From IMG/VR virus record IMGVR_UViG_3300009011_000001, positions 62,001 to 126,000 of that record: DNA of 64,000 nucleotides. One strand, written 5' to 3'. A model generated the notes under the pieces. It searched no databases. It saw only the letters and a program-made list of their open reading frames with translations, and was not told where the DNA came from. Position numbers and translations under genes: made by a program. This document shows, one piece after another, positions 2,519 through 26,108 of the stretch (positions are counted from its first letter, which is position 1; each line of letters opens with the position of its first letter).

Positions 2519-2522
2519 AGAC

Positions 2523-2572
2523 GACATAAGGCCGGCCCGCAGGGGCTGGTTTTATGCCGCATTTTCTTTTTT
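2523..2572 (+). terminator. CATA-hairpin-TATG element with U-tract
   Basis: gacataa-ggccggccc-gca-ggggctggtt-ttatgcc followed by ttttctttttt. Confidence 0.8.
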
Positions 2573-2621
2573 CACTCGATGCACTAATGTTACATACGCC
2601 GAGCCCCATGGATGTAACGAA

Positions 2622-4751
2622 ATGTCAAAGAGTGCGAATCCTTTCATCCGCGATCTGGACGATTACCAGCGCGATATCGATATCCTCCCCGGTGCAAAAG
2701 AACAGATTGCGAAGTATGTAAGCCTACGACTGAAGATTACGTTTGAAGAAGCCTACGAATGGCTTGAGAAAAAGCTGAAAGATCCGCAATGGAAAATTAA
2801 AGACCCAGCAATGGAACGTCTGCTTCGTAAAGGACCCGGCAATCGGGTCGAAGACGAAACGACCTTCCTGCAGTACATCGAAGAGATCATCGACAACAAC
2901 TGGATTCTGTCGCCCGCACTGGTAGCGTATCAGCGTCCTGAAGTTGAGCTGTCTCCGATTGCTGAATGGCAAGAAGATAACATTGCTGCACGTAAGAAAT
3001 CCAAGACCAACATGTTCGTCCTGAAACAGGCCGGTCAGTTGCTCAAGTCTGCTTTGGCGGACTATGACCAGAACGCACGGAAGATTCGGATCAACGCCGT
3101 ATCTGGGCAGCATGGTTCTGAAGCTAACCCGTTGTATCAAGCTACCGGTCACTATAGCCTCACAGCTCTCTGCCGAGCTGCAGCGGGGTACGGTAACGGC
3201 ACCGTTGAACGCTTCCTCACGGGATCTAAACATTATCACACGCCCGAGATAGCCAAGGCGAATCTTGTCGCGATTCTTACCATGGAAGATAAGAGTCGCT
3301 TTCAAGAGGCCATGGATTTCTACGAGCTGACATATCCTGAAGTAGACGACGTGCTGGCAATGGTTGAGCATTCGACCAGCCTGTATTGGAAGTCTCCAGA
3401 AGAGTCTGCCATCATCCGTGATTGCATCACCGGCATGACGCCACTGGAGCGAGCCATTGTTACCTACTCGGGTGACATGTTCCACTTGGCTAAGCACAAC
3501 CCGGACATCATCCGTGAATTCATGGGTGAAATGATTGTCGACAATATCGATGGCATGGAAGATGTCGATACTGACGCTGAGCTGAAAACCATGAACTCCA
3601 CAGATGTTGCGTACATCAACGCCCTGTGTGCTGACGTGATGATCGGTTCCGACCACAAGCGGGTAAAGGCAAACGACCCAGCTGGGTGGCAAGTCATCGG
3701 TAAGACAGCTCGTCGCTTTAAGGACGTGATGCAGCGATTCCAGTTGCTGATCTCGACCTTCTTCGTGCCTCGTCACCTGCCGCCGACTGTGGCTTCTCTG
3801 AAAGGCATTCAGCGCCGCGCTTGCCTGGCAGCAGATACCGACTCCTCCATCTTCACCTGCGAGTCGTGGGTTAAGTGGTATTCGGGCGACTTGAAACGCG
3901 GTCGCACACAAGACCGCATCTGGTACCTGACCACCTACATGGCGTGTCAATGCATTGCGCACTCTTTGGCAATGTTGTCGGCAAACGTCGGTGTGGAAAG
4001 AAAGAACATCTTCCGCTTGGCTATGAAGAACGAGTACGCATTCCCAGTGTTTGCACTCACGAACTTGGCCAAACACTACTTCTCGCTTATTTCTATGCGC
4101 GAAGGTAACGTGTACAAGAAGATGGACTTGGAGATCAAAGGCGTTGAGCTTCGTGGTTCCACTGTGCCAAAGGAAACTTTGGATGCAGCCAAGGACCTGA
4201 TGCAATTCATCCTGAACACTGCAAATGCCGGTGAGAAGATGAACGCCAAGAAGATGCTCACTGAAATTGCTGAGCGTGAGATCGAAACGATTCGTTCGAT
4301 TAAGCGCGGTGAGTACAAGTACCTGAAGTCTGCACAGATCAAGCCGAACAGCGACAAGATCATCCACTTCGAACTCTGGCAAGAAGTGTTTGGTCCAAAG
4401 TACGGCGAATCCGTGCTGCCACCTTTCCCGGTGGTGAAAGTAACAACCGAGCTGACCAACAAGACTCTGATGAAAGAGTGGTTGGAAGGCATCGAAGACA
4501 AAGAGTTGGCTGCACGCATGGTTGCTTGGCTGAACCGCACTGGTCGTGACAAGTTGCCTACCATGTATCTGCCTACTCAGGTTGTTCGAAATTCTGGCCT
4601 GCCAGTAGAGATTCAAGAAGCGGCAAACGTACGCAAGCTCGCTTACCAAATCAACTCCGGCTTCTACCGGATCCTTGAGTCCACAGGTTTGGCTATCGTC
4701 GACCGCAATCACCACCGTCTGGTGTTTGACTTCTTGAGGATGGCGGCATGA
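2622..4751 (+). CDS. Family B DNA polymerase, subunit carrying motifs B and C (phiKZ gp50-like)
   Basis: KIRINAVSG (motif B), AADTDS (motif C), KHYF and IKGVE; likely start MSKSANP at 2622. Confidence 0.9.
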   Translation: MSKSANPFIRDLDDYQRDIDILPGAKEQIAKYVSLRLKITFEEAYEWLEKKLKDPQWKIKDPAMERLLRKGPGNRVEDETTFLQYIEEIIDNNWILSPALVAYQRPEVELSPIAEWQEDNIAARKKSKTNMFVLKQAGQLLKSALADYDQNARKIRINAVSGQHGSEANPLYQATGHYSLTALCRAAAGYGNGTVERFLTGSKHYHTPEIAKANLVAILTMEDKSRFQEAMDFYELTYPEVDDVLAMVEHSTSLYWKSPEESAIIRDCITGMTPLERAIVTYSGDMFHLAKHNPDIIREFMGEMIVDNIDGMEDVDTDAELKTMNSTDVAYINALCADVMIGSDHKRVKANDPAGWQVIGKTARRFKDVMQRFQLLISTFFVPRHLPPTVASLKGIQRRACLAADTDSSIFTCESWVKWYSGDLKRGRTQDRIWYLTTYMACQCIAHSLAMLSANVGVERKNIFRLAMKNEYAFPVFALTNLAKHYFSLISMREGNVYKKMDLEIKGVELRGSTVPKETLDAAKDLMQFILNTANAGEKMNAKKMLTEIAEREIETIRSIKRGEYKYLKSAQIKPNSDKIIHFELWQEVFGPKYGESVLPPFPVVKVTTELTNKTLMKEWLEGIEDKELAARMVAWLNRTGRDKLPTMYLPTQVVRNSGLPVEIQEAANVRKLAYQINSGFYRILESTGLAIVDRNHHRLVFDFLRMAA

Positions 4752-6829: not shown

Positions 6830-8791
6830 ATGTCTGACGATAATCTGTTCAAAGACGGTAACAACGACCAATCTCACGCAGGTACCGAACAACGTCAAAA
6901 CGAACGCACCACCCACGAATCTGCGCAACAACGCTACGAACAGCCAGCACCATCGGCCTGGACTCTGGCTGATCTGGGTAACGTCCAAGGTCGTCCAAGC
7001 CTTGGCGGTCTGACCGACGGCGCTCTGTCGCTGATGATCGAAACCTTCGAAGAAGCCAAGGACCGTGCAAGCGGCCGTGTTCCCGAAGAAATCAGCTCCA
7101 AGCGCTTCAAAGCTCTGCCGCTGGTTGGCCAGCGCATCGGTAGTCAGATGTCGGCTCTGCTGATCGCTCTGCCTGCGACCATCGCCAACAAGCTGTACGC
7201 AATCGTCTACATCGCTCTGATCGAACCGGCTGGCCCGATGGCTACCCGTTCTCTGTCCGACGGCCAAGGCACTTACGAAGCTCTGTACCTGCCGGAAGAC
7301 CGCCTGACCGAGAAATACGTGAAGGCCATCCGTGACGAAGTGTCGGCCAACATCCCAGGCGCGCAAATCGTTATCGCCGGTCGTCAAGTGATCACCCAGG
7401 GCACCGTTGCTGCGCTGAACGAAAAAGAAGGCGTGGGCATCATCGAGCGCATCTTCGACAACGGCTTCGACGCAATCTGCGGCTACCGCCAGAACATGAT
7501 CGATGCCATCACCGGTCAGCGTACCAGCGATCGTCGCATCAACCCGGACGCCGTCGGTCGCCGTGACCGTCTGGAAGCCAGCTTCGACTTCTCCGGTGCC
7601 CAGCCTCTGGACACCTCGGGTCTGCCGATCGCTTCCGACGCCGCAATGACCATCTGGTACTCGGCCGCCGACCAGGACGAAGAAGGTAACTACAACCGTA
7701 TTCCTCTGGCCGAAGCGCGCATGTCGCTGAACCTGTTCCTGGATCAAAGCACCAAGCAAAACACCCTCGGCTTCGGCCGTCGTCGTGATCGCAACAAAGA
7801 TGACCCGGCTCCGTTCCAAGCGGTGCTGACCATCAACAACGTGACCTCGCCGCAAGGTGTTCCGTTCTCCCTGGAACTGGCGCAGCTGACCATCGCAGCT
7901 ACCGCAATCCTGTCGAACGACTACCGCTGGGCTGAAATCCTGCGTCCGCGCGCTACCATGCCTTCCGGCCTGAAGCCTGCGTACAACATCAAAGACCTCG
8001 TGCATTTCGCCGACGTCACCGATGAGCAGCGTGAAAAGATCCTGCAAGCCGTTACTCCGAACATCAGCGACGCCGACCTGTCGAACTACCTGGACCTGGT
8101 CGTTCAACCGCAAATCGCTTTCGCAATCGTGGCTCCAAGCTCCTGCGAGAAATCGTGGGTTCTGTCGATCTACGAGAAGATCGCAATGGCGAAGAACGAT
8201 GCCGAGCGCCGTGCTCTGACCACCACCCTGTACGACAGCGCCGACGTCGTGACCGGCAAGCGCTTCCGTAAGGTTCTGCGCGAACTGGGCGGCGACGACA
8301 GCACTCCACCAGTTGTTCTGACCGGCAACCCGACTCTGGTCGGTACCTGGGTCGACTCCGACGGTCGCGAGCGCGCTCTGAGCGAAATTCAGAACGTGCC
8401 TGCGGTCCTGAGCCGTGTCGGCGCGAAAGGTCTGGAGCTGGTTGAAGACTTCCAGTTCACCATCCAGGACGATCGTCGTCCGGTTCCGGCCAACTTGGCG
8501 GACCGCTTCGGCATGTTGAACAAGTCCTTCGGTTCGATCCACGTTGTGACCACTGCAGAACAAGTCGGCCTGGTGCCGATCTACCTGCAAGCGCTGAACA
8601 TCTCCCTGCAACAGGCCAACATGACCTGCGTACCGACTTCCCTGGAAGGTACTCAGACTCGTCGTCGTCCTGCTTCGGGCGGTTACGGCGGCCTGGCCAC
8701 CAACGATATCGGCGCCACTCGCCGTCAAGGTTCCGGCTTGTCCGGCCTGAACACCCGTGGCAACGATCCGTTCGGCGGTCGCTACTTCTAA
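6830..8791 (+). CDS. chmA: Chimallin, the major phage nuclear shell protein (phiKZ gp54/PhuN-like)
   Basis: 653 aa, strong codon bias, AAGGAG RBS, low-complexity N and C termini, located between the gp52-like gene and the nvRNAP beta' gene. Confidence 0.85.
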   Translation: MSDDNLFKDGNNDQSHAGTEQRQNERTTHESAQQRYEQPAPSAWTLADLGNVQGRPSLGGLTDGALSLMIETFEEAKDRASGRVPEEISSKRFKALPLVGQRIGSQMSALLIALPATIANKLYAIVYIALIEPAGPMATRSLSDGQGTYEALYLPEDRLTEKYVKAIRDEVSANIPGAQIVIAGRQVITQGTVAALNEKEGVGIIERIFDNGFDAICGYRQNMIDAITGQRTSDRRINPDAVGRRDRLEASFDFSGAQPLDTSGLPIASDAAMTIWYSAADQDEEGNYNRIPLAEARMSLNLFLDQSTKQNTLGFGRRRDRNKDDPAPFQAVLTINNVTSPQGVPFSLELAQLTIAATAILSNDYRWAEILRPRATMPSGLKPAYNIKDLVHFADVTDEQREKILQAVTPNISDADLSNYLDLVVQPQIAFAIVAPSSCEKSWVLSIYEKIAMAKNDAERRALTTTLYDSADVVTGKRFRKVLRELGGDDSTPPVVLTGNPTLVGTWVDSDGRERALSEIQNVPAVLSRVGAKGLELVEDFQFTIQDDRRPVPANLADRFGMLNKSFGSIHVVTTAEQVGLVPIYLQALNISLQQANMTCVPTSLEGTQTRRRPASGGYGGLATNDIGATRRQGSGLSGLNTRGNDPFGGRYF

Positions 8792-13320: not shown

Positions 13321-13944
13321 ATGACTGATGACCGCGATTTGAGTCACCTCAGCGCTGCCACCCGCGCTGGCTTGGCTGACTGGGATGATGCTGCTAACAG
13401 CATCCTGGAAATGTCCAAGGCGATGATTCGCCGTGTACCGGAAGCCTACTTCGTTCACAAGCTTCTGCCGATCATCCGTAACTGGGTACAGGGTCTGCCT
13501 GCGGAAGTAGGTCAGTGGATGAACGTGGCTGACGGCATGGAGAACGAGATCATCGTTGTCGATGAAAAGAACGTCGAACTCTTCATCTGCCCACCTCCTT
13601 TCATCGGTATTCCGCCACGCGCGCATTTCAGCGCCAAGAACCGTGATTCGGCTCACGCCATTGTTCACGCTCAAGGCCTGATGTACGACGCCGGTGAGAT
13701 CCGTAAAGCTAACGCCATTGACGAATCCCTCTTCGAAATGGTGGTCGATAAACCTGACGTCGCCATCAAAACGGCCGCGTTGGACAAGATGATCGCTATC
13801 TGGCAACGTTATGAATTACCGTTGCAGGAACTACTAGGGGCGCACACTGACGAGATCATGGCAGCTCGCGGCGCACCCAGCAATGTAGCAGCGAAAGATC
13901 AGGCGCCAACCAATGACGACCAAAACGAAACCATTAGCTACTGA
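13321..13944 (+). CDS. Conserved hypothetical protein
   Basis: 207 aa; GAGG RBS. Confidence 0.8.
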   Translation: MTDDRDLSHLSAATRAGLADWDDAANSILEMSKAMIRRVPEAYFVHKLLPIIRNWVQGLPAEVGQWMNVADGMENEIIVVDEKNVELFICPPPFIGIPPRAHFSAKNRDSAHAIVHAQGLMYDAGEIRKANAIDESLFEMVVDKPDVAIKTAALDKMIAIWQRYELPLQELLGAHTDEIMAARGAPSNVAAKDQAPTNDDQNETISY

Positions 13945-15034
13945 CGCCGTCAGGATTGCCTGGATAAGCGATGTGCATCTCGCGCATCGCCGCGTCAAGA
14001 TCAAGAAGCAGCTCGATTATCTGCGCCGTCGCTTTAATAGAAAGACGATGCACAAATATCGAGCCATCGTTTGTTCAGGCGATTTGTTCGATAAGCGCAT
14101 CCCTCACGACAGCGAAGAAGCTATTCAGATCTCCATCTGGATGACTGAGCTGTGTGAGCTGGCAAAAGAGTTCAATGTCTCTCTTGTCTTCCTTCTGGGC
14201 ACCCCTAGTCACGATCAGGGCCAGCCTCGTTGGATCGTTATCATCAACGAAGAGATTGCGAAGATCGGTGCGGACGTTCGGTATTACGACAAAGTCACTG
14301 TCGACAAGTTGTACCCGGATGGCCCAAATGCGTTGTTCATTCCGGATGAGGTCAATCATTCGTCTGACCTGACGTATAAGGAAGCAGTAGAAGCAATCAA
14401 GATGGCCGGTCTTGATAAAGTGGAGATTGCCGTCATGCACGGTATGTTCCACTATCAGGAACCGATTCGCACGGTGGTGAGTCATAGCGAAGAAAAGTAC
14501 CATGAGATCGTTAAGCACCTGATCATCATTGGCCACCACCACACGCACACCAAGTTTGGGATCATTCGTGTACCGGGCTCTATGGAGCGCCTGAGACACA
14601 ATGAAGAGGAAGATAAGGGTCACTTTGAAACTGTCTACTCTCCGACCGAAGGTGTGTTAGAAGAAGAGTTTATTGTCAACACAGACGCCGAGATCTTTGC
14701 CACTATCAATATAGAAGGCTGGCCTCTGGATCAAGTCTATGCGCATCTTAACAGCCTTAGTCACTATCCGGATGGTAGCAGGCTACGTTTAGCGATGAGT
14801 CGTCATGATGAGGCTTATACGGCGTTGCCTGGCATTAAGAACCGGTTCCCACACTTCAGCATCGAATCCAAAAACATCGAAGTGGAGAAGCAGATAAAAG
14901 AGACGGCGGATTTAATCGACCGTCCAGTCATGACCTCCATCAGACCCGACACCCTAAAGTCTCTTGTCATGCCAAGGATCACCGGCGATGCTGAGGTTCT
15001 GAAGGTTGTCGAAGCCATTTTGGATGAAGAATAA
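13913..15034 (+). CDS. sbcD: SbcD/Mre11-like metallophosphoesterase nuclease (gp65-like)
   Basis: SDVH, GDLFD, GTPSHD, MHG and GHHH motifs. Confidence 0.88.
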   Translation: MTTKTKPLATDAVRIAWISDVHLAHRRVKIKKQLDYLRRRFNRKTMHKYRAIVCSGDLFDKRIPHDSEEAIQISIWMTELCELAKEFNVSLVFLLGTPSHDQGQPRWIVIINEEIAKIGADVRYYDKVTVDKLYPDGPNALFIPDEVNHSSDLTYKEAVEAIKMAGLDKVEIAVMHGMFHYQEPIRTVVSHSEEKYHEIVKHLIIIGHHHTHTKFGIIRVPGSMERLRHNEEEDKGHFETVYSPTEGVLEEEFIVNTDAEIFATINIEGWPLDQVYAHLNSLSHYPDGSRLRLAMSRHDEAYTALPGIKNRFPHFSIESKNIEVEKQIKETADLIDRPVMTSIRPDTLKSLVMPRITGDAEVLKVVEAILDEE

Positions 15035-15048
15035 CCAAGGAGCACAAG

Positions 15049-15909
15049 ATGTCTGCTGCTCAAGACAGATCACGAGAAGTTATATCGCTCCGCGCAGTAG
15101 GACAGTTCCCACTGTCCATTGCAACGAGCCTAGCGTTTGAATCGGCTGTGGGGATCCTTCCTGAGGCCCCAGCGCCTGAGCCAGAGATCCAAAAGCGTGA
15201 TCTGATTATGGTCAATGTCAGGACGTTGATCCGTAACCTCTTGGGCTCCATTGCGAAAGAAGACAAGCCCCACCTGGAGAACTATACGCTGGCCGAAGCA
15301 ATCGTCAGCGAAATGAAGGTAATGGAGCAACTGGCAGTAGAACACTCGAATGGACAGTGCAGCGTTGAGTTCTATTCCTGCACCTACAGCGATGTTCAGC
15401 TGAAGTTCTCCAGGGCTTTGATTAAAGTGCCTACAACGCCGCTACAGGTGGCTTACATGGGTATTGAAAAGGATATCATCAAGTACCTCAAGGAAGATTT
15501 CAAAACGGCACCACCGATCGAAGACTACACCCGAGAATTTAAAGATCGTCAGAGCGATGCTTTGATTATTACGCACTTTGCAATTGATCTGTTGCAGCGT
15601 TATCGGTTCAACTCTTTGTCTCTGCTGGAATCCCACACCGGGGCTATCAAACCTCCATTGCTGTGGAATACCAAGCTGCATGATGGCCGTGAGTTCGAGA
15701 TTCTGCCATTTGACAGAATGACGCTGCAGATGTTTGGCGACGGTGTGATCTTCGCACCTATGCCGATCAAGATTCGTCAACGACTGTATTCGATCGCTGT
15801 GAAACAACAATGGACTCCGGCTTCTACAAAGGACTGGATCATTAAAGGCGTCGAGGCACATCGTGACCCAGCACTTGAGGTATTGGTCAAGGATCTCTAC
15901 CGTAAGTAG
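15049..15909 (+). CDS. Conserved phiKZ-like protein (gp66-like)
   Basis: 286 aa; AAGGAG RBS; syntenic position. Confidence 0.75.
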   Translation: MSAAQDRSREVISLRAVGQFPLSIATSLAFESAVGILPEAPAPEPEIQKRDLIMVNVRTLIRNLLGSIAKEDKPHLENYTLAEAIVSEMKVMEQLAVEHSNGQCSVEFYSCTYSDVQLKFSRALIKVPTTPLQVAYMGIEKDIIKYLKEDFKTAPPIEDYTREFKDRQSDALIITHFAIDLLQRYRFNSLSLLESHTGAIKPPLLWNTKLHDGREFEILPFDRMTLQMFGDGVIFAPMPIKIRQRLYSIAVKQQWTPASTKDWIIKGVEAHRDPALEVLVKDLYRK

Positions 15910-15968
15910 CCGTAAGTAGTTACATCAAGCGTATATTTATTGAATAACTCAACCGCAGGTGGCATCAA

Positions 15969-16754
15969 ATGTCGGACCAAAAACAAGGCTGGACTCCCAC
16001 GGTAATGGATGAGCGAAAGCTCAAACTCCACGGCGAACATGCTCTGGTGGAGGGCGGGTTCAAACCTGAGTTCGCCATCAAGTGGATTCAGAAAACCAAC
16101 GCCTTCTCCATCAAGGTCAACACCGGCACCAAGACCGAGAAAGGTTATCCGATCGTTATCGAGACCGCCATCGACTGCCTGTCGTTGATGGAACTGATGG
16201 AACTGATCGACACCATCTCCAAAGCGCCGGGCGCCGTGTCCTTCGAAATGGACAACTGGGGCCAGCCGTTCATCTACAGCAAGGAGCAGGGCAAGTCCAT
16301 CCGCAGTCCGGACATCCTGAACGTTTCTCGCTTCCAGATCGCCAAGCGCGAAGACGGCTCCATGGTTCTGTCCGTGGCCGCCAAGGGCAAGAAAGAACTC
16401 GAGTTCGAATTCAAGGGCAGCGACTTCCACCGTATCCAGAAACAGGGCGAAGCGAACAAGGCCATGGCCTCGCGTATCGCAGCTCAGACCTGGGCCGGCT
16501 TCTGGAAGAAGTTTGCTTTCGAGAAGTACACCAAGGACTGGGCAGAAACCGAGTACGACAAGAACAAGCGTATCGAGCGCATGAACAAAGCCAACAACAA
16601 TGGCGGCGGTCAGCGTAACTACAACAGCAATAGCGGTGGTGGCAGCAATAACAACTACCAGCAGCGTCCTCAGCAACAAGCTCCTCAGCAAAGTGCTCCT
16701 GCACCGGCGTCGCAGCCATTCGAAGACAGCTTCGATGACGACGTTCCGTTCTAA
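15969..16754 (+). CDS. chmC: ChmC-like nucleus-associated single-stranded nucleic-acid/RNA-binding protein (gp67-like)
   Basis: Globular N-terminus, N/G/Q-rich disordered C-terminus, SSB-like tip DSFDDDVPF; lies immediately upstream of the gp68 and picA homologues. Confidence 0.7.
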   Translation: MSDQKQGWTPTVMDERKLKLHGEHALVEGGFKPEFAIKWIQKTNAFSIKVNTGTKTEKGYPIVIETAIDCLSLMELMELIDTISKAPGAVSFEMDNWGQPFIYSKEQGKSIRSPDILNVSRFQIAKREDGSMVLSVAAKGKKELEFEFKGSDFHRIQKQGEANKAMASRIAAQTWAGFWKKFAFEKYTKDWAETEYDKNKRIERMNKANNNGGGQRNYNSNSGGGSNNNYQQRPQQQAPQQSAPAPASQPFEDSFDDDVPF

Positions 16755-16776: not shown

Positions 16777-16830
16777 AACATACAGAAACCCTCAATCGCA
16801 AAACGCTGCGATTGAGGGACTTTATGCCGC
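16777..16830 (+). terminator. CATA-hairpin-TATG element
   Basis: ccctcaatcgca...tgcgattgaggg flanked by cata and tatg. Confidence 0.7.
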
Positions 16831-16912: not shown

Positions 16913-18493
16913 ATGGAGTTAAGAATTGCAACTTACACAGTTCGAAGCTTTTCGATTGTGGAAGCGAGGCATGGGGATGAGCCGGAACTTGTGTTCAATA
17001 CGGCAGGCTACACATCCACAAAGCCCGGCGCAATTAAGCGTGACGACGACAGCGAACTCGGCACCAAGATCGAGCTCTTTGAAGAAATCAACGCCCTGAT
17101 TGCAAGCCTTGATCAGAAATCGCAGGACGCATTGTTCGAGGAGTACGCTCGTCTGGACAGTACGTTGACCAGTTTCCATGTTATCGGATCGACTGGCATC
17201 TCTGCGATGAAACAACTGAAAGAAAACCTGTCGGCGATCATCAAAGCGATCTACGACATCATTCCTTTCAGCGCTTTCCGCGACTACATCGTTAACAGCC
17301 CGCACATTCGACTGCCCATCGAGTTGGCGGACACCTACGTCACCACAGACAAAGTAACACCGCTGTATAAAGAGCGGACTTACCTTCGCCCTGAGTACAT
17401 CGATCTCAATGCGTATGCATTGGCTCTGCGGCTGATGATCCCAATCTGGGGCGGCTATCTCCCGATCGCCGAAACCGAGCATGGGAAGATGAAAGAGTAC
17501 GACGCGTTCAAGCTGCTCTACGGTTCTGCCTTAATGAAGACGCCGGTGTTCGATCGGTTGGAGCGTTATCTGGCAGCAAACCTCGACGCAAGCAAGTACG
17601 AGTTGTCGGTGGTCTCGAAGTTCTTGTCGGCAGACGAAGTCCCAGGGTTCCTTGCAGCGTTTGCATTGATCCGGAAAGTCAGCGTCGCGCCATTGTCGGC
17701 TGTGTCTGATAAAGACCACCTGATGAAGATCATCTATAACTACGTTATCGGTGACAAGAACCGCATCCCTCCAGCGTTCGCGAGCAACATCCGCGATAAG
17801 AAACCTGACGACTCCTCGTCTGAAGGTAACGAAAGCGTCTGGGGTATCTTCAAGATGAAAGCAAAGATCTCCACCGGGGACTTGTGCATCATTGAAGAAT
17901 ACATCGAGAAGTACACCCGAGCCGCCAAGAAGATTGCGCCGACTCTGTCCGATGAACGAATCGAGCTGTGTGTTCAGAACGCTCTGACTCTGCACGACTT
18001 CGATCCGACCTACGGCCAAGAGTGGCTGGTGATGCAAGTGTGTTCTACGATCATCGTGGGTACAGCCATCGAGTTGATGGATCGCACACCTGGGCTTATT
18101 GCAGCAGGTATTGTTCAAGCGGTATTGTGGGAATGGGAACTGCCGCAACTGGCTATTCTGACCACGGCCCGTATCGCCAAACTTAAAGAAGGAGAAATCA
18201 TTCAACCGATGCGGCGCTTACCCATTGCGCCTGCTTTGCTAGAACAGTTTGATGTGATCTACCCGTACCGGACGCCCGAGCCGAAACGTGGCGATCCGAT
18301 CCAGTCAACCAACACCGGTGTCATCGATGTTGAGAAGCATGCCGCACACTTCTATCGCCACGACTGGGTTCCGCAATGCCCGACTGAACTTGCCAAGAGC
18401 TACTATCGTTCCGACAAGACCCGACGGATCGAAGTCACCGGTGACCTTAACAGTCAGCTTGGTGAAATGCTGGTCAAGATCAACAACTTCTAA
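16913..18493 (+). CDS. nvRNAP promoter-specificity (sigma-like) subunit, gp68-like
   Basis: 526 aa; size and position between chmC and picA. Confidence 0.75.
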   Translation: MELRIATYTVRSFSIVEARHGDEPELVFNTAGYTSTKPGAIKRDDDSELGTKIELFEEINALIASLDQKSQDALFEEYARLDSTLTSFHVIGSTGISAMKQLKENLSAIIKAIYDIIPFSAFRDYIVNSPHIRLPIELADTYVTTDKVTPLYKERTYLRPEYIDLNAYALALRLMIPIWGGYLPIAETEHGKMKEYDAFKLLYGSALMKTPVFDRLERYLAANLDASKYELSVVSKFLSADEVPGFLAAFALIRKVSVAPLSAVSDKDHLMKIIYNYVIGDKNRIPPAFASNIRDKKPDDSSSEGNESVWGIFKMKAKISTGDLCIIEEYIEKYTRAAKKIAPTLSDERIELCVQNALTLHDFDPTYGQEWLVMQVCSTIIVGTAIELMDRTPGLIAAGIVQAVLWEWELPQLAILTTARIAKLKEGEIIQPMRRLPIAPALLEQFDVIYPYRTPEPKRGDPIQSTNTGVIDVEKHAAHFYRHDWVPQCPTELAKSYYRSDKTRRIEVTGDLNSQLGEMLVKINNF

Positions 18494-18519: not shown

Positions 18520-20172
18520 ATGCGTCTTCTTAAACTAAACTTCGTCGAAGCTCCACCGATGGCCGATCAGTACATTCGGTCATTCGATTTCGATATGAAG
18601 AATAGCCGGATTGACGATCTGGCAAGGCTGACCGAAGACGGTACAAACATCCTTCCTGAACGACTCGCCAAAGTCAGTTCTTCGCTGATGTCCCCAACGA
18701 CCCAACGTCGTGAGAAGATCGTTTCTCAGATCGATAAGGGCTGGGGGCAGCGCCGGATCATGTTCTCGATGGTGGTTGAAACATCCAGCCGTCCAAACCA
18801 TCAGACGTACGAATACATCGTTGGCCATACCGACCACGATGGCTTCTCGATGCTCGGCATGAAGGAAGTGAAGCTCGACAACCGGATGAAGCTGTACTTC
18901 GACCAGATCACCCACATTAACCTGTCGGGCGGTATGCGTCGTAATCAAGAAATCTGGACTCCGTCCATCAAGGCCAGTGACTTGGTCTTGAACCGTGACA
19001 CGCTGCGTGGGTTTGGCCACGACGACCTAGCTAGCCATGGCGGTCACCGCCCACTCACCAAGCGCCCAACGGATCTCTTCCGCCGCGAAGGCGCAGAGCT
19101 GAACTACAACGAAAGCAACTTCAGCCTAGACAGCGATAGCAACGATCGCCGTTCGGAAACCCACACCAACAATACTGTTGGTACGTTCACAAGCACGTTG
19201 AAGCTTTCCAGTCGCGATAACAATAGCCCAACCTCGTTCCTTCATCGGACCCTGGATGGCTACGTTACGGCATCTACCGGCCTGGGCCTGGGCGCTGATT
19301 CCAGCCCGTACGGTTTGCCAGACGAACGTCAGAACAAGCTGAGTAATCTGAAGCGTGCCTACGGCACTGTGGATGAAAACGATCCATCAGCTGACCGCTA
19401 CATCGAAGAGCTCAAGGAGAATACCCGGATCCTCAACACCGGTTACATCACCTACGGCGAACTTATGGAGATGAACCCAGAGTTCGTCAAGAGCGCTCAA
19501 GAAGACTTCGCCTTCGCAGATCCAAAGAAAAGCTATCGCCATGGCGACATGGGGATGTGGCGCGGTGACGACAACGAAACCATTGCAGCGTTCCAGATTG
19601 CTTGCTCGCTTCCGGGCCTGATGATCAAGAACATGTACTCGAAGATCGATGGGTTCACCATCAACTCCTACGGGCACAGCAAACTGCAGCGGATCACTGG
19701 CGGTATCACCAGCCCGTACATCGAAGGTATCGATACTTCTGCCACATGGCCGAACTTCGAACACCAGGTATCTGAAATCATGATCCACGAAGTCACTCGT
19801 GGGGCATTCAACTTCGAGGCCAAGATCGATGCAAACGTTGACGGTTTCGTCGACATCTGGATCCGCATCGACGGTGGTCCTGAATCCTTCCACAGCTTCC
19901 CGGCATATTGCGCAGGCACTGTGGCTCCGACTCTGGATACCGACGTGACTTCGCTGAGCCGCATGAGCCGGAACATGACTTCGATCTCGAACAGCTTGGC
20001 TGACAGCCGTCTGAATCGTAGTCGAATCAGTCTCGGTGAGCTTAACCGCAATGAAGAAGGCGGTATCAAGCTTGGTATTGGCGGTAACTTCCGCCGCGAA
20101 AACAATGATCTTTTCGGTAACACCGACGATCTTCCGTCCAGTCTCGCACTTCCTTCGAAGAAGAACTGGTAA
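18520..20172 (+). CDS. picA: PicA/Imp1-like phage-nucleus protein import factor (gp69-like)
   Basis: 550 aa; follows the gp68-like gene in the conserved block; GWGQRRIMF segment; synteny-based. Confidence 0.7.
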   Translation: MRLLKLNFVEAPPMADQYIRSFDFDMKNSRIDDLARLTEDGTNILPERLAKVSSSLMSPTTQRREKIVSQIDKGWGQRRIMFSMVVETSSRPNHQTYEYIVGHTDHDGFSMLGMKEVKLDNRMKLYFDQITHINLSGGMRRNQEIWTPSIKASDLVLNRDTLRGFGHDDLASHGGHRPLTKRPTDLFRREGAELNYNESNFSLDSDSNDRRSETHTNNTVGTFTSTLKLSSRDNNSPTSFLHRTLDGYVTASTGLGLGADSSPYGLPDERQNKLSNLKRAYGTVDENDPSADRYIEELKENTRILNTGYITYGELMEMNPEFVKSAQEDFAFADPKKSYRHGDMGMWRGDDNETIAAFQIACSLPGLMIKNMYSKIDGFTINSYGHSKLQRITGGITSPYIEGIDTSATWPNFEHQVSEIMIHEVTRGAFNFEAKIDANVDGFVDIWIRIDGGPESFHSFPAYCAGTVAPTLDTDVTSLSRMSRNMTSISNSLADSRLNRSRISLGELNRNEEGGIKLGIGGNFRRENNDLFGNTDDLPSSLALPSKKNW

Positions 20173-21930: not shown

Positions 21931-24120
21931 ATGGAGTTGCAAATGTCGGATCCGCGATTTCCGATTCACCCTGAGTATGTTTCATTTAACGGGATGAACT
22001 CGTATTTCAAAAACGTGTCACCCGTTCGACAAGTGATGCACACCGGCGCTATGTCCCAAGCGCTGATCGTAGATGGCCGCACCCGTAAGCGTCAGCAATC
22101 GGGTCTGGAACGAGAAATTGCCCGAGGAGCTCTAAACCACACGTTCCGAAACGACGTGATCATTCGAGCCGTAATCCCACGCTTTACTGATGACATGTTC
22201 AGCCACCTTCCCAATGGCCGAACTGCAAACCCGCTCGATCTGGTGATCTTTGAAGATTACCGTACCGAGCAGCTGGACGTCATGGAGCTTTCTAAGTTCC
22301 ACGTCATGCACCAGCACTTTGGTTTCGTGTTCGACATCGACGAAGACATCTATAACCGGATGGCCAACGTCAAAGATGTCATGATTCCAGCAGGCACTTG
22401 TGTGGCTCGCTCTCCGGCCGTTACGCCGGATGGTGACTACATGCCCGGACTCGAAACCAACGTTGTGATGCTGTCTCACCCGGCAACGGATAACGACAGT
22501 ATCATTTTCTCTGAGTCCTACGCGTCAAAGCGTATCCGTTCCAACGCCTTCGAATCTCGTGGGCTGGAATGTGGCCGGCACAAATATCCGATTAACGCTT
22601 ACGGCAATGGCTCGATCTTCAAGCCAATGCCCGATGTAGGCGAGATCATTCATAGCAACGGTCTGCTGATTGCGACTCGTCCTTACGACGAACGCCTCGA
22701 TGCGGTCTACATGACGCGCAAGCAGTTGCTCAAGCCGATCTATTGGCTGGATGATCGAATCGTTGGCCACGCAGGTGCTGAGATTGTTGACATCGAAGTG
22801 ATGCACAACAGTCATCTTGCAAGTCAGCGCTTGCCGGAAGAAATGTCAAGACAGTTCCGCAAGTACTACGACGCCGATCGCCGCTTCTATACGGAGCTGA
22901 TCCGCAATACGGTATTCCGTAGCGGGCGTTGGAATGACAACGTGAACATGTCTGACCGTCTGGCTACTCTGGTCACCATGGCAATCCCTCGTGCCGGTCA
23001 CATGCTGGTCGAAGAGGGAATGTGGCCGAAGAACCAGGCTGATGAACTGGACGTGCGTCTGAACTATCGTGGCGATCTGCTCGATGAGTGGAAGGTGAAA
23101 CTTACCTACCGCTATAAGACAGAAGCAGGCGAGGGTCCAAAGGCTACGGACGAAAACGGCGCTAAAGGCGTTGCATCGTTTGTAATGCCAGACGCCGACA
23201 TGCCGGTCGATGCATTCGGTAACCGTGCTGAGATTGCTGTACTCAGTAACCCGACTGTAAACCGGATGAACCCTGGTCGTCCTCACCAGCAAATGATCGG
23301 CGCTGCCGGTCGTGATGTAATCAAACGTGTTCGCCGCACCTACGGTCTGCCGTCGATGGGCGAAGTCACGAGAGAAGGGGCTGAGCGTGCTGTTTACGAC
23401 AAAGCCAATGCTGAACTGAACTTTAAGAACTTCGCGTACATCGTTGGGTTCTACAAGATCGTCAGCAAAGATCGGATGTACATGTTGGCAACTCGCGATG
23501 ACGTCATCTCTACTGGACGCTATCTGCGACATCTCGTCGAAGTCATTCTTGACGGCAACGGCGAGCATGCTTACGGCATGTACATTCAGAAGGTCCCTGA
23601 GAGCGAAGATAAGCTCGATGAGATCATTGATGCGCTGTACTCTGGCGATTACCGCCCTGAGATGAGCCCGGTTACCTTCCGCGATTACAGCGGCAAAATG
23701 GTGACCACCAAGGAAGATGTGCTGATCGGACCGATCTACCACCTCATCCTGGAAAAGACTGCTACCGATGGCTCTGGCGTGAGTTCTGCGAAGCTTAACC
23801 ACTTCGGCATTACTTCGCGTCTGACCAATGCCGACAAGCACTCAACCGCTGGTCGTCAAACGGTGACTCGTTCTCTCGACGAGGCATCCATCCGGAGCAT
23901 GGCAGCGGCATCTGGCGCTGAAGTCATGGCGCACATCGTTGACCTGCACAACAACCCAGTGGTGCACAAAGCGGTGTGTCGCAACATCATTACGGCCGAT
24001 AAGCCTACCGACATCGATGAACTCGTTGACCGGTCGGTCTTTAAGCTGGGTGGCCACCGGCCGCTTGCGTTTGCAATCAACCAGTTCATTTGCTCAGGCA
24101 AGTTCATCACTCACGACTAA
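21931..24120 (+). CDS. Non-virion RNA polymerase beta-like C-terminal subunit (gp71-73-like, uninterrupted)
   Basis: GPKATDENGAKGV, DMPVD, NRMNPG and IGPIYHLILEK beta-subunit motifs; start may be 21943. Confidence 0.9.
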   Translation: MELQMSDPRFPIHPEYVSFNGMNSYFKNVSPVRQVMHTGAMSQALIVDGRTRKRQQSGLEREIARGALNHTFRNDVIIRAVIPRFTDDMFSHLPNGRTANPLDLVIFEDYRTEQLDVMELSKFHVMHQHFGFVFDIDEDIYNRMANVKDVMIPAGTCVARSPAVTPDGDYMPGLETNVVMLSHPATDNDSIIFSESYASKRIRSNAFESRGLECGRHKYPINAYGNGSIFKPMPDVGEIIHSNGLLIATRPYDERLDAVYMTRKQLLKPIYWLDDRIVGHAGAEIVDIEVMHNSHLASQRLPEEMSRQFRKYYDADRRFYTELIRNTVFRSGRWNDNVNMSDRLATLVTMAIPRAGHMLVEEGMWPKNQADELDVRLNYRGDLLDEWKVKLTYRYKTEAGEGPKATDENGAKGVASFVMPDADMPVDAFGNRAEIAVLSNPTVNRMNPGRPHQQMIGAAGRDVIKRVRRTYGLPSMGEVTREGAERAVYDKANAELNFKNFAYIVGFYKIVSKDRMYMLATRDDVISTGRYLRHLVEVILDGNGEHAYGMYIQKVPESEDKLDEIIDALYSGDYRPEMSPVTFRDYSGKMVTTKEDVLIGPIYHLILEKTATDGSGVSSAKLNHFGITSRLTNADKHSTAGRQTVTRSLDEASIRSMAAASGAEVMAHIVDLHNNPVVHKAVCRNIITADKPTDIDELVDRSVFKLGGHRPLAFAINQFICSGKFITHD

Positions 24121-24134
24121 TCGAGGTATCATCA

Positions 24135-26108
24135 ATGCGTACGTTTCACGTCAGAGAATTCTTTGACAATCCGCAAAGAGATTGGCCGTGTTTGAAAGAT
24201 GAGCTGTTTACCCTGCAGTTGGACGACGGGGAGAAAATCAAGACCGTTACGGCGGCGCTGGAGATCTCCAAGAAGTTGTGGTTGGTCCATGAGAAGTACG
24301 ACCGCCTGCCGATCCTTGCGCGTCACTGTGTGCAAAAGGTACCGATGTCCAATGGCGATATTTCTGCCATTGGCTCGGCGGTAGCCGAAGATATTCACGA
24401 CATCTACGGCATCGGCGGATATAACCGGGAAGAGCTCTGGTGGTATATGCAGCTGAACAACCAGCGGCTGTACAACGAGAGTATCATTGACTATCCTGAG
24501 TACATGAGGGGGTCTAACTCCTTCACGTTCCACGAGGTCTACCAACACCCGGAAATCAAGAAGATTCGGGAAACGCTTTACGATAACCCGACAGCAATCT
24601 CCATTGAGAAAGCGAACGACAAGGCAACGCACGTCATCATGACGGCACCTGACCTTGCGCGTAACGCCATCGTATCTGACCTCCGGGCCAAGATCATCAA
24701 GATGGAGCAGTTCCTGCAGGTCATCCTTGTTCGGGGTTTCAACACCGACATCGATGACGTGATCTATCGCAAGCCGATCATGGGCAACTATTACTCCGGC
24801 ATCAACGACCCTGCTGAAGCGGCCATGGACTCGACCTTGGCTTCCAAAGCGATCATCTATCAAGGTGAGCCGTTGGAGCAAACCGAATACGCCAACCGGA
24901 AGTTGCAGTTCAGTTCACAGCGGGTTGATCTGCTGATCATGAACGACTGTAACTCCCCGGTGTTGGCACCTATCGAAGTGACGCCTGCGCGCTACTCCGA
25001 CATGGAAGGGTTGTACTTCAAAGATCCGGAGACGGGGAACCTCAAGTCCCTGCGTCTGCGTGATCGAAAGAAATACGAAGGCATGACTCTGAGCTTTCGG
25101 TTACCGTTCAATTGCAAGTATCGAGGCAGTGCTTGCGTATGCCGGATGTGTTACGGCGAGCTGGCATTCAACCTGCCTTACGGTGTGAACATCGGCCATG
25201 TGGCTTCCACCATGACTCAGTCGGAAGTATCTCAACGAGTGCTGAAGGTTAAGCACTCCGAGAAGTCGACTGTGGCCGAACGTATCAACATCAACTCCGA
25301 GGAGAAGCCTTACATCGACCATGCTGAAGCGCCGAATATGATTGTTCTCAATCCTAATTTGGCGAAGAATGGCATCAAGTTGTTGCTCAAGGCTGCGGTG
25401 GTTCAGGGCGTGTTCAATGCGTCCAAGATCCCACTGCTCAAGAAGGACCAGATTCGCGAGGACGTTCCGACGTCCAAGTTCAGTCAGTTCCGCAATGTGT
25501 CGTTCGATCTGCCGACTCAAAGCAAACAACCGATGCGGGTGCACGTCACTGTCTCGAGGGGTGGTAACTATTCCTTCCTGACACACGACTTCCTACGGTT
25601 TATGCTTAAAGAACAGTTCACAATCCGGGAAGATGGGTATTATCACATCGACCTGACGAACTGGGATTTCAACAAGCCGGTATTCGAGCTGCCGAACAAA
25701 CATATCTCGATGCGTGACTTCGCTGCTGAAGTTGAGGTGTTCGTTCGTTCCACACGGGATAACTCCAGTCGCCACCTGGGTCGCCTGAAACAGCTGACCC
25801 AATACGCCGACCCAGTGGAAGCAATGCTGGACGCGCATGAACTGATCGCGAGTAAGGTTCCCGTTTCGATGACTCACGTAGCCGTGGTGCTTCTATCCAT
25901 GACTGTGGGCATGGACCGGGACAGCGTCAAGATCCCACCGTTTGGCGAGACTCTGCGTTTCGCTAAGTACGGCAAGATCCTGGCGAACGGTAGCTACGGT
26001 GCGCTGTTTGCGTACCAAGGCGCCAATGCGGTAATGGACAAGATGGAGCAGTTCCTGATTGTAGATAGGATGCAACATTTGCTCGATCCGATGATCATGC
26101 CAAATTAA
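24135..26108 (+). CDS. Non-virion RNA polymerase beta'-like C-terminal subunit (gp74-like)
   Basis: TEYANRKLQ bridge-helix-like segment, C..VCRMCYG Zn site, SQRVLKVKH trigger-loop-like segment; GAGG RBS before ATG 24135. Confidence 0.9.
   Translation: MRTFHVREFFDNPQRDWPCLKDELFTLQLDDGEKIKTVTAALEISKKLWLVHEKYDRLPILARHCVQKVPMSNGDISAIGSAVAEDIHDIYGIGGYNREELWWYMQLNNQRLYNESIIDYPEYMRGSNSFTFHEVYQHPEIKKIRETLYDNPTAISIEKANDKATHVIMTAPDLARNAIVSDLRAKIIKMEQFLQVILVRGFNTDIDDVIYRKPIMGNYYSGINDPAEAAMDSTLASKAIIYQGEPLEQTEYANRKLQFSSQRVDLLIMNDCNSPVLAPIEVTPARYSDMEGLYFKDPETGNLKSLRLRDRKKYEGMTLSFRLPFNCKYRGSACVCRMCYGELAFNLPYGVNIGHVASTMTQSEVSQRVLKVKHSEKSTVAERININSEEKPYIDHAEAPNMIVLNPNLAKNGIKLLLKAAVVQGVFNASKIPLLKKDQIREDVPTSKFSQFRNVSFDLPTQSKQPMRVHVTVSRGGNYSFLTHDFLRFMLKEQFTIREDGYYHIDLTNWDFNKPVFELPNKHISMRDFAAEVEVFVRSTRDNSSRHLGRLKQLTQYADPVEAMLDAHELIASKVPVSMTHVAVVLLSMTVGMDRDSVKIPPFGETLRFAKYGKILANGSYGALFAYQGANAVMDKMEQFLIVDRMQHLLDPMIMPN

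What the first reader, a model, noticed from the sequence alone, without database searches (positions are those of the whole stretch)
16590..16754. ChmC-like protein ends in a close mimic of the host SSB linker and acidic tip
Seen: the C-terminus is ...QQRPQQQAPQQSAPAPASQPFEDSFDDDVPF, following an N/G-rich low-complexity stretch. Established: bacterial SSBs end in a Q/P-rich linker plus DFDDDIPF (SFDDDIPF in Pseudomonas, from memory), which docks partners such as RNase HI, ExoI, RecQ, PriA and TopoIII. Inference: the phage nucleus RNA-binding protein may recruit or import host SSB-interacting enzymes, or titrate them away from the host chromosome. The tail may have been captured from host ssb.
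Basis: partly seen in the sequence, partly recalled or inferred. Interest (0 to 1): 0.7.

Follow-up and report, generated by a model that had tools for sequence, protein, structure and literature searches.

The report
Phage nucleus protein with SSB-type tail
A jumbo phage that builds a nucleus-like compartment encodes a known RNA/ssDNA-binding protein (ChmC) whose floppy end copies the tail of the bacterial single-strand DNA-binding protein, which suggests ChmC is the phage's missing SSB-like docking hub.

Summary
ORF 15969-16754 (+) encodes 261 aa ending ...QQRPQQQAPQQSAPAPASQPFEDSFDDDVPF. It is the ChmC orthologue of a 248.6-kb phiKZ-like (Chimalliviridae) phage from rhizosphere and soil. 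The evidence is a phrog_3284 match, a conserved gene order (SbcD-like, gp66, ChmC, gp68, PicA), a chimallin gene in the window, and a Whirly/PUR fold followed by a 50-aa disordered tail.

The tail resembles Pseudomonas SSB beyond composition. It shares 32 of 61 aligned columns with an SSB tail, no composition-preserving shuffle reached that score, and 151/151 Pseudomonas genomes end SSB in DSFDDDIPF.

It is not a recent capture. Codon identity at shared residues is at chance. An SSB-type tip (acidic run, then [ILVMF]-P-[FWYLMI] at the very end) closes 117 of 150 diverse ChmC relatives that were found using the folded core alone. None of 11 chimallivirus genomes has an OB-fold SSB.

Best reading: ChmC is the chimallivirus analogue of SSB, a tetrameric nucleic-acid binder with an SSB-like linker and a docking tip. 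Whether the tip binds host or phage proteins is untested; my one complex prediction gave no answer. The published ChmC work calls this region an "electronegative cluster" and never mentions SSB.

The parts
15969..16754 (+). chmC gene (261 aa plus stop). An AGGTGG ribosome-binding site lies at 15957-15962.
   Evidence: ORF list and sequence. phrog_3284 E=1.6e-18 over the full length; phiKZ gp67 hits the same family at 6e-80. 21 homologues of similar length. Single copy in the genome.
15969..16601 (+). Ordered core, residues 1-211: two beta-sheet-plus-helix repeats (Whirly/PUR fold) and long C-terminal helices. Net charge +5, pI 9.1.
   Evidence: AF2 model, mean pLDDT 78.5, with residues 1-211 mostly above 85. 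The top 14 PDB matches by VIA-align are all Whirly/PUR/MRP proteins, Z 6.3-8.8, followed by a drop to 5.5. Foldseek gives 2gje_D at probability 0.97. BFVD hits are jumbo-phage proteins at E 1e-13 to 1e-10. Charge.
16602..16718 (+). Disordered linker, residues 212-250: an N/G-rich part with Tyr, then a Q/P/A-rich part (NNYQQRPQQQAPQQSAPAPASQP). It is colinear with the intrinsically disordered linker of Pseudomonas SSB.
   Evidence: pLDDT below 50. Score 93 versus shuffles 62.3 +/- 6.3, 0 of 300 reaching it. The likeness is specific to this clade. Alignment to the Pseudomonas sp. GM48 SSB tail.
16719..16751 (+). Acidic tip FEDSFDDDVPF-COOH (net charge -5). This is an SSB-Ct-type short linear motif.
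   Evidence: Sequence. Tips are conserved as DSFDDD[IV]PF in most close relatives (7 of 9 among P0001-P0009), with variants such as FEFEEEIPF, DDFDEHLPF and FDFDNDIPI elsewhere in the clade. Pseudomonas SSBs end DSFDDDIPF in 151/151 genomes. 117 of 150 family representatives end in an acidic run plus [ILVMF]P[FWYLMI].
16789..16818 (.). Perfect 13-bp stem with a 4-nt loop, 35 nt after the chmC stop. Terminator-like element that closes the gene.
   Evidence: Scan and sequence. Serratia phage Moabite has an annotated terminator at the same relative place.
13913..15034 (+). SbcD-like nuclease subunit (phiKZ gp65 homologue), first gene of the conserved block.
   Evidence: PF00149 and phrog_100. tblastn to gp65, E 3e-34.
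15049..15909 (+). phiKZ gp66 homologue (phrog_3229), immediately upstream of chmC.
   Evidence: 31% identity to gp66, E 1e-38. Found in 290 phage records, all jumbo phages of proteobacteria.
16913..18493 (+). phiKZ gp68 homologue (non-virion RNA polymerase subunit by my own knowledge of phiKZ), immediately downstream.
   Evidence: 22% identity, E 1e-30. phrog_3209 at 2e-84.
18520..20172 (+). PicA/Imp1 (phiKZ gp69) homologue, the nuclear import factor.
   Evidence: 23% identity, E 9e-25. phrog_3141. gp69 is named PicA in PMC13648698.
6830..8791 (+). Chimallin (ChmA), the nuclear shell protein. It marks this phage as nucleus-forming.
   Evidence: phrog_4795 'nuclear shell protein', E 7e-36 over residues 20-641. 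It lies between the gp50 and gp55 homologues, as in phiKZ.

Best explanation
The gene is the ChmC orthologue of a phiKZ-like, nucleus-forming jumbo phage whose host is probably a soil or rhizosphere Pseudomonas. ChmC is built like a bacterial SSB on a different scaffold. A basic Whirly-fold core binds single-stranded nucleic acid; the PhiPA3 orthologue is published to be a tetramer that binds ssRNA and ssDNA. The core is followed by a G/N/Q/P-rich disordered linker and an acidic tip ending in hydrophobic-Pro-aromatic at the free carboxyl end. I propose that ChmC fills the SSB niche inside and around the phage nucleus by coating nascent RNA and ssDNA. I further propose that its tip works as the SSB C-terminal tip does in two ways: (a) it folds back on the basic nucleic-acid surface, which together with the linker tunes binding and condensate formation, and (b) once nucleic acid displaces it, it docks partner enzymes. 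In this clade the whole tail is colinear with the host-type SSB tail, so it should fit the same SSB-Ct pockets.

Shown here: the sequence, fold, synteny, family-wide tip, statistical likeness to Pseudomonas SSB, and absence of other SSB families. Shown by others: nucleic-acid binding, tetramer formation, and the requirement of the whole C-terminal region for condensates, shell localisation and a late step of infection. Inferred: the SSB-like role, tip docking, self-inhibition, and the identity of partners.
For: ChmC identity rests.

Tail likeness to Pseudomonas SSB: tip DSFDDD[I/V]PF versus 151/151 genomes. Linker order-specific z about 5 for the best match and about 8 for the mean. 32/61 identical columns for this protein and 38/59 for relative P0006.

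The tip is ancestral and under selection. A profile of the core only (no tail) found 1189 representatives. Of the best 150, 117 end in [ILVMF]P[FWYLMI] preceded by at least 2 acidic residues. Linkers vary in length by indels while tips stay fixed.

No alternative SSB exists. PF00436, PF08804 (gp32), PF10991 (Enc34 type) and PF05037 (DUF669) are all absent from this complete genome. PF00436 is absent from 10 of 10 named chimalliviruses. The family's core-genome paper never mentions SSB or ssDNA.

Literature. PhiPA3 ChmC binds ssRNA at 58 nM and ssDNA at 184 nM, is a tetramer, and was found by proximity labelling from the recombinase UvsX. Deleting residues 204-251 abolishes condensates and shell localisation (PMC11077065). 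A pulldown of Goslar RNase H-clamp (Rhc) recovers ChmC together with the DNA polymerase and RNA polymerase (PMC13648698). As precedent, prophage DUF669 SSBs carry a DDDIPF end (PMC13687109).
Against: No direct evidence exists that the tip binds anything. The only complex prediction (Rhc orthologue plus tail residues 222-261) returned 'no answer'. A published AF2 all-against-all screen for phiKZ Rhc did not pick ChmC. Published data favour RNA over ssDNA about three-fold and show mRNA binding in cells, so a primarily RNA-directed role remains possible. The six basic residues mutated in PhiPA3 ChmC do not align with basic residues here, although at about 14% identity the register is uncertain. 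The terminal residue varies across the family (65 F, 23 M, 12 W, 12 L, 4 Y, 1 I) and the phiKZ clade ends in P-x-F, so the receptor may not be a classical SSB-Ct pocket in all clades.
Confidence: 0.53

Rival explanations
1. Host-directed mimicry. In this clade the tail copies the host SSB tail in order to bind host SSB partners (ExoI, RecQ, PriA, RNase HI, Topo III, the chi subunit). It either brings them to the phage nucleus or starves the host chromosome of them.
For: The match extends to the lineage-specific residues D-S-F, whereas enteric SSBs have P-M-D-F. It also extends to the order of the linker. This degree of likeness is confined to the window's clade and is absent from the phiKZ, PhiPA3 and Psa21 ChmCs. 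ChmC is abundant, expressed early and partly cytoplasmic in PhiPA3.
Against: phiKZ, PhiPA3, Psa21 and DT01 also infect Pseudomonas but have different tips: AFDEDMPSF, GFDDEIPNF, GFGDVMAF and FNFDDDVPL. Named phages of enteric hosts do not copy PPMDFDDDIPF. The host of this phage is inferred rather than known. No interaction data exist.
Confidence: 0.22
2. Pure biophysics. The tail only drives condensates and solubility: an N/G-rich 'sticker' region plus an 'electronegative cluster' that suppresses non-specific RNA binding. The likeness to SSB is convergent and no partner docks.
For: This is the published interpretation, and deleting the whole region abolishes condensates. Linker composition across the family is 33% G, 16% N and 10% Q.
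Against: A charge cluster does not need a fixed hydrophobic-Pro-aromatic triplet at the exact C-terminus, yet 117 of 150 diverse members keep one while the linker drifts freely. The published deletion removed linker and tip together, so it does not separate the two.
Confidence: 0.13
3. Address label. The tip is a targeting signal that takes ChmC to the nuclear shell or through it, recognised by PicA, ChmA or ChmB.
For: Removing the C-terminus of PhiPA3 ChmC abolishes shell localisation, and a ChmC pulldown recovers ChmB. picA lies two genes downstream in every genome examined.
Against: Goslar ChmC lacking the C-terminal region still formed puncta in the nucleus, although wild-type protein was present. 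Nothing known about PicA cargo recognition involves an SSB-like tip. Not tested here.
Confidence: 0.1
4. An ordinary phage SSB unrelated to ChmC, or a chance low-complexity tail.
For: The only sequence hits in the PDB are the tails of bacterial SSBs, and they are weak (E 0.2 and 0.89).
Against: There is no OB fold and no Pfam SSB family. The fold is Whirly and the protein belongs to the ChmC family. Chance is excluded.
Confidence: 0.02

Closest known systems
ChmC of PhiPA3 (gp61), phiKZ (gp67) and Goslar (gp176); Enustun et al., NAR 2024, PMC11077065
   Same: Same PHROG family, same place in the conserved gene block, same Whirly fold, same size (246-261 aa), and the same plan of core plus N/G-rich disordered region plus acidic end.
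   Different: Only about 21% identical to gp67. The tip here is the canonical SSB form ...DDDVPF, whereas the phiKZ clade has an extra residue before the last Phe (IPNF, MPSF) or ends in GFGDVMAF. The linker here contains a Q/P/A-rich SSB-like segment that the phiKZ clade lacks. The published basic RNA-binding residues do not align.
C-terminal tail of bacterial SSB (E. coli 1eqq/4mz9; Pseudomonas SSB, PF00436 proteins)
   Same: Tetramer-forming single-strand binder (tetramer published for PhiPA3 ChmC only) with a G/Q/P-rich disordered linker and an acidic tip ending in I/V-P-F-COOH. 32/61 identical columns to a Pseudomonas SSB tail. From my own knowledge, both E. coli SSB and ChmC form condensates that depend on the tail.
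   Different: The nucleic-acid-binding domain is a Whirly/PUR fold rather than an OB fold. Val replaces Ile in the tip; no Pseudomonas SSB sampled has Val. The published preference is RNA over ssDNA.
Non-OB phage SSBs with acidic or SSB-like tails: prophage DUF669 proteins ending in DDDIPF (PMC13687109); T7 gp2.5 and T4 gp32 acidic tails (my own knowledge)
   Same: A phage-encoded single-strand binder on a non-SSB scaffold carries a bacterial-type C-terminal docking tail. The authors of the DUF669 paper proposed mimicry of host SSB.
   Different: Different fold and family: DUF669, gp32 and Enc34-type profiles do not match this genome. ChmC belongs to a compartmentalised, nucleus-forming phage that excludes most host proteins.
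Plant Whirly proteins (StWhy2 3r9y, AtWHY1 4koo, PBF-2 p24 1l3a) and trypanosome MRP1/2 (2gid, 2gje)
   Same: Best structural matches, Z 8.1-8.8. From my own knowledge, they are tetrameric ssDNA/RNA binders that maintain organelle genomes.
   Different: No detectable sequence similarity (5-10% identity in the structural alignments). Eukaryotic organelle proteins. I did not examine whether they carry an SSB-type tip.

Membership tests
ChmC (phrog_3284; chimallivirus nucleus-associated RNA-binding protein) | Sequence-profile match to the family that contains phiKZ gp67 | tested here: met
   Window protein matches phrog_3284 at E=1.6e-18, residues 3-261 on profile positions 5-256 of 256. phiKZ gp67 matches the same family at 6.1e-80. 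The direct pairwise match to gp67 is weak: 21% identity, E 0.05.
ChmC (phrog_3284; chimallivirus nucleus-associated RNA-binding protein) | Position in the conserved block SbcD-like / gp66 / ChmC / gp68 (nvRNAP) / PicA in a chimallin-encoding genome | tested here: met
   Flanking genes match phiKZ gp65, gp66, gp68 and gp69. The same order holds in 12 named chimalliviruses. ChmA lies at 6830-8791.
ChmC (phrog_3284; chimallivirus nucleus-associated RNA-binding protein) | Whirly/PUR-type fold | tested here: met
   AF2 model with pLDDT 78.5. The top 14 PDB matches are all Whirly/PUR/MRP, Z 6.3-8.8. Foldseek probability up to 0.97.
ChmC (phrog_3284; chimallivirus nucleus-associated RNA-binding protein) | Disordered C-terminal 50-70 residues: N/G-rich region followed by an S/D/E-rich end | tested here: met
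   Residues 212-261 have pLDDT below 50. Composition and tip. The feature is described in PMC11077065.
ChmC (phrog_3284; chimallivirus nucleus-associated RNA-binding protein) | Homotetramer that binds ssRNA/ssDNA through basic residues of the beta-sheet | tested here: inconclusive
   The oligomer was not modelled. The core is basic (net +5, pI 9.1). The six residues mutated in PhiPA3 align with F, N, I, A, S and A here, at about 14% identity where the register is unreliable.
Bacterial-type SSB (PF00436) | OB-fold ssDNA-binding domain | tested here: not met
   No Pfam family at E up to 0.1. The fold is Whirly/PUR. PDB sequence hits to SSBs cover only the tail, at E 0.2 and 0.89.
Bacterial-type SSB (PF00436) | Disordered G/Q/P-rich linker and acidic tip ending in IPF at the C-terminus | tested here: met
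   Tip DSFDDDVPF versus DSFDDDIPF in 151/151 Pseudomonas genomes. Linker likeness exceeds all 300 shuffles. 32/61 identical columns.
Bacterial-type SSB (PF00436) | Tip docks partner proteins (SSB interactome) | tested here: inconclusive
   The one complex prediction (Rhc orthologue plus tail) gave 'no answer', score 0.01, which counts neither for nor against. Biochemistry is needed.
Other phage SSB families (T4 gp32 PF08804; Enc34 ORF6 type PF10991; DUF669/T7 gp2.5-like PF05037) | Profile match | tested here: not met
   None of the three profiles matches anywhere in the 248.6-kb genome, and none matches this protein.

The most novel reading that the evidence does not exclude
Within the ChmC family, the window's clade has replaced or remodelled its tail to copy the linker and tip of its Pseudomonas host's SSB. 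This lets an abundant early phage protein plug into the host SSB interactome, either pulling host genome-maintenance enzymes to or into the phage nucleus or depriving the host chromosome of them. More broadly, ChmC would be the long-missing SSB of nucleus-forming phages, coupling replication, recombination and RNA handling through one SSB-Ct-type docking motif.
Probability: 0.22. Interest if true: 0.8.

Novelty: new variant of a known kind. Interest (0 to 1): 0.58.

Why it matters
ChmC is essential for nucleus-forming jumbo phages and is currently read as an mRNA-export factor. Its C-terminal region has been tested only as a whole and is explained as a condensate driver. Recognising that the last residues form an SSB-type docking tip gives a sharper hypothesis that can be tested at once. 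That tip is kept in most of the family, and these phages have no OB-fold SSB. One small motif may link ChmC to the replication, recombination or RNase H machinery, or to host SSB partners. This would help explain how replication is organised inside a compartment that excludes host proteins. It would also add a third scaffold (Whirly), beside the OB fold and the gp2.5/DUF669 fold, on which the SSB tail logic has appeared. In the papers I could search, none connects ChmC or gp67 with SSB.

Tried and rejected
- **Nucleotide and tblastn searches of the phage collection** with the region and the protein found nothing. I used the conserved neighbour gp66 instead.
- **phiKZ chimallin against the genome** found nothing. 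The PHROG profile found ChmA.
- **Recent capture from host ssb** is rejected. blastn finds only the 30-nt tip, which is identical by construction of the pattern, and one 17-nt word. Codon identity is at chance.
- **Tight host tracking of tails across the family** is rejected. Named phages of enteric hosts and other Pseudomonas phages do not copy their hosts' SSB ends.
- **Complex prediction** of the RNase H-clamp orthologue with the tail gave no answer and cannot be used either way.
- **RecA/UvsX profile search of the genome** found nothing, probably because of divergence. No conclusion is drawn.
- **A second ORF ending in acidic residues plus DDF** (G000:C1:48210-48854) was checked as a possible gp2.5-like SSB. 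It has no PHROG match.
- **The minus-strand 264-aa ORF 15897-16691** overlapping chmC is treated as a shadow frame. It was not searched. The plus-strand frame carries all the homology.
Full report
**1. What is in the sequence**

The flagged interval 16590-16754 is the last 54 codons plus the stop of a 261-codon ORF at 15969-16754 on the plus strand. An AGGTGG ribosome-binding site lies six bases before the ATG. A perfect 13-bp hairpin follows 35 nt after the stop, at 16789-16818.

The window is part of a complete 248,574-bp virus record with direct terminal repeats and 52% G+C. The record was recovered from a rhizosphere metagenome and seen again in a soil metagenome.

**2. The protein is a ChmC orthologue**

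Four lines of evidence agree.

- **Family.** Pfam finds nothing. PHROGs places the protein, end to end, in phrog_3284 at E 1.6e-18. phiKZ gp67, published as ChmC, scores 6e-80 against the same family.
- **Gene order.** The genome is collinear with phiKZ from gp50 to gp82. The ORF sits in the block SbcD-like (gp65), gp66, ChmC (gp67), gp68, PicA (gp69). The flanking proteins match at E 1e-38, 1e-30 and 9e-25. The same order holds in 12 named chimalliviruses of Pseudomonas, Burkholderia, Erwinia, Serratia, Xanthomonas, Ralstonia, Cronobacter, Salmonella and Vibrio.
- **Chimallin.** The nuclear shell protein is encoded at 6830-8791.
- **Fold.** An AlphaFold2 model (mean pLDDT 78.5) is ordered for residues 1-211 and disordered for 212-261. 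Its 14 best PDB matches by structural alignment are all Whirly, PUR or MRP proteins (Z 6.3-8.8), after which scores drop to 5.5 (Foldseek). The best viral matches are jumbo-phage proteins.

This is the fold and domain plan published for ChmC (PMC11077065). Direct identity to gp67 is only 21%, so the gene is a distant member of the family. Its closest named relative is Pseudomonas phage pPa_SNUABM_DT01, judged by the neighbouring gene at 44.7% identity.

**3. The tail resembles Pseudomonas SSB**

These were almost all Pseudomonas, Stutzerimonas, Cellvibrionaceae and other gammaproteobacteria. Of the 120 ends, 119 read DSFDDDIPF and none has Val. The loci are PF00436 SSB genes. The pattern occurs in 151 of 151 sampled genomes of the genus of P. 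fluorescens. By contrast, E. coli and Klebsiella SSBs end in PPMDFDDDIPF. The phage tip therefore matches the Pseudomonas form, including the lineage-specific D-S-F, and differs only by Val for Ile.

The likeness continues into the linker.

- Residues 205-250 score 93 against the best SSB linker, versus 62.3 +/- 6.3 for 300 composition-preserving shuffles. None of the shuffles reached 93.
- The mean score over all SSBs is 63.9, versus 37.7 +/- 2.8 for the shuffles.
- The whole tail aligns with the tail of the Pseudomonas sp. GM48 SSB at 32 identical of 61 columns. Relative P0006 reaches 38 of 59 and shares the decamer RPQQSAPQQS.

The best matches are rhizosphere-type pseudomonads. That fits the source of the record, but the host remains an inference.

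**4. Not a recent capture; the tip is a family hallmark**

At DNA level only two things match: the 30-nt tip, which the search pattern itself selects, and one 17-nt word. Among residues identical between the phage tail and each SSB tail, identical codons are no more frequent than ChmC's own codon usage predicts. The counts are 18 versus 15.6 expected for the best SSB, and 1455 versus 1398 in total.

All 21 homologues of the window protein, down to 22% identity, end in closely similar tips. The phiKZ clade has related ends with one extra residue (GFDDDIPDF, AFDEDMPSF) or GFGDVMAF.

To sample tails without bias I built a profile of the core alone (residues 1-200, 48 sequences). I searched it against 1.84 billion representatives and found 1189 hits at E of 0.001 or better. 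Of the best 150:

- 117 end in [ILVMF]-P-[FWYLMI], preceded by at least two acidic residues.
- The last residue of those 117 is F in 65, M in 23, W in 12, L in 12, Y in 4 and I in 1.
- The region before the tip is 33% Gly, 16% Asn and 10% Gln.

In this phage's own genome, one of 2108 open frames has such a tip.

An SSB-type tip on a Gly/Asn/Gln-rich linker is therefore an old and conserved property of ChmC. The close, order-specific resemblance to Pseudomonadales SSB linkers is confined to the window's clade. The z score of the mean is 8-10 for the window protein and P0006, 4.6-6.3 for more distant members, and 1.6-2.0 for phiKZ, PhiPA3 and Psa21. Ancient exchange with an ssb gene and convergence both remain possible.

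**5. No other SSB in these phages**

Profiles for bacterial SSB (PF00436), T4 gp32 (PF08804), the Enc34 type (PF10991) and DUF669 (PF05037) find nothing in this complete genome. PF00436 finds nothing in ten named chimallivirus genomes. The paper defining the family's core genome never mentions SSB or ssDNA.

**6. How it most likely works**

Published work on PhiPA3 and Goslar ChmC shows:

- a homotetramer that binds ssRNA (58 nM) and ssDNA (184 nM);
- discovery by proximity labelling from the recombinase UvsX;
- binding to phage mRNAs in cells;
- loss of condensates and shell localisation when residues 204-251 are deleted.

A pulldown of the Goslar RNase H-clamp protein, a DNA polymerase subunit, recovers ChmC together with polymerase subunits. 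From my own knowledge, E. coli RNase HI is one of the enzymes that bind the SSB tip.

Put together, the best-supported reading is that ChmC is the chimallivirus counterpart of SSB. It is a tetrameric single-strand binder on a Whirly scaffold. Its linker and tip do what the SSB tail does: they regulate binding and condensation, and they dock partner enzymes once nucleic acid is bound. That ChmC binds nucleic acid and needs its C-terminal region is shown. That the tip is a docking motif is an inference from its conservation pattern.

I tested one candidate, the 499-aa RNase H-clamp orthologue of this phage (G000:C1:2331-3830). The complex prediction gave no answer, which is not evidence in either direction.

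**7. Rivals**

It is weakened because other Pseudomonas chimalliviruses have different tips. The family's terminal residue also varies, whereas bacterial SSBs are invariant.
- **A purely biophysical role** (the published 'electronegative cluster' view) does not explain a fixed hydrophobic-Pro-aromatic end at the carboxyl terminus.
- **A shell-targeting or import signal** is compatible with the published deletion phenotype, but nothing here supports it directly.
- **An ordinary SSB unrelated to ChmC** is excluded.

**8. Novelty**

ChmC and its N/G-rich plus acidic tail are known. Non-OB phage SSBs with bacterial-type tails are also known: prophage DUF669 proteins with DDDIPF (PMC13687109), and T7 gp2.5 and T4 gp32 from my own knowledge. 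The new points are that the ChmC tail is an SSB-type linker plus tip, that this is near-universal in the family, and that these phages otherwise lack an SSB. In the searchable literature I found no paper that connects ChmC or gp67 with SSB. I rate this a new variant of a known kind, of moderate to good interest, because it turns a vague 'disordered tail' into a defined motif that can be deleted and tested.

Noticed in passing
proteins P0134, P0160, P0183, P0221, P0223 (family hits): Five ChmC relatives are 404-466 aa long with two matched stretches. In the three whose sequences I read (P0134, P0160, P0183), two Whirly modules sit in one chain, followed by the same kind of linker and tip (for example ...QPPMDFDDSIPF and ...EPPLDFDTDIPF, which resemble the enteric SSB end PPMDFDDDIPF). 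This parallels the two-OB-fold SSBs of Deinococcus and Thermus. No Pfam match.
   Followed up: partly
window 2433-4751 (+): Homologue of phiKZ gp50 (33.8% identity over 725 aa, E 2e-135). PMC13648698 calls gp50 the C-terminal subunit of the split DNA polymerase that binds the RNase H-clamp protein. It lies about 2 kb upstream of chimallin.
   Followed up: partly
G000:C1:2331-3830 (L003:1252-2751, +), outside the window: A 499-aa protein with an N-terminal RNase H domain (PF00075, phrog_3265 at E 8.5e-102). It is the probable orthologue of the RNase H-clamp (Rhc) protein and has 72 homologues of the same length in metagenomes.
   Followed up: partly
G000:C1:48210-48854 (L141:711-1355, +), outside the window: A 214-aa ORF ending ...HEEENEADDMAVVLPSGKRIIFDDF. 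This acidic end with a terminal Phe is reminiscent of the T7 gp2.5 tail. No PHROG match; function unknown.
   Followed up: partly
L140 (Pseudomonas phage HPP-Temi, PP968062.1 255410-259458): In this phage the slot after the gp66 homologue holds a 322-aa gene on the opposite strand instead of chmC, so ChmC must lie elsewhere or be missing. This is the one exception to the conserved block among 13 phages examined.
   Followed up: no
L049 (NZ_VWXK01000011.1, labelled Pantoea sp. Ap-967): This 6.7-Mb genome has a Pseudomonas-type SSB tail (...APQPAADFDSFDDDIPF) rather than the enteric PPMDF form. The organism label may be wrong.
   Followed up: no
window 21988-26096 (+): Homologues of phiKZ gp71, gp73 and gp74 (E 2e-38, 4e-51, 9e-61). 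By my knowledge of phiKZ these are non-virion RNA polymerase subunits, so chmC lies inside the conserved transcription-gene block described in the ChmC paper.
   Followed up: partly
window 15897-16691 (-): A 264-aa open frame on the opposite strand overlaps almost all of chmC. It is probably a shadow of the G+C-rich third positions of chmC. Not searched.
   Followed up: no
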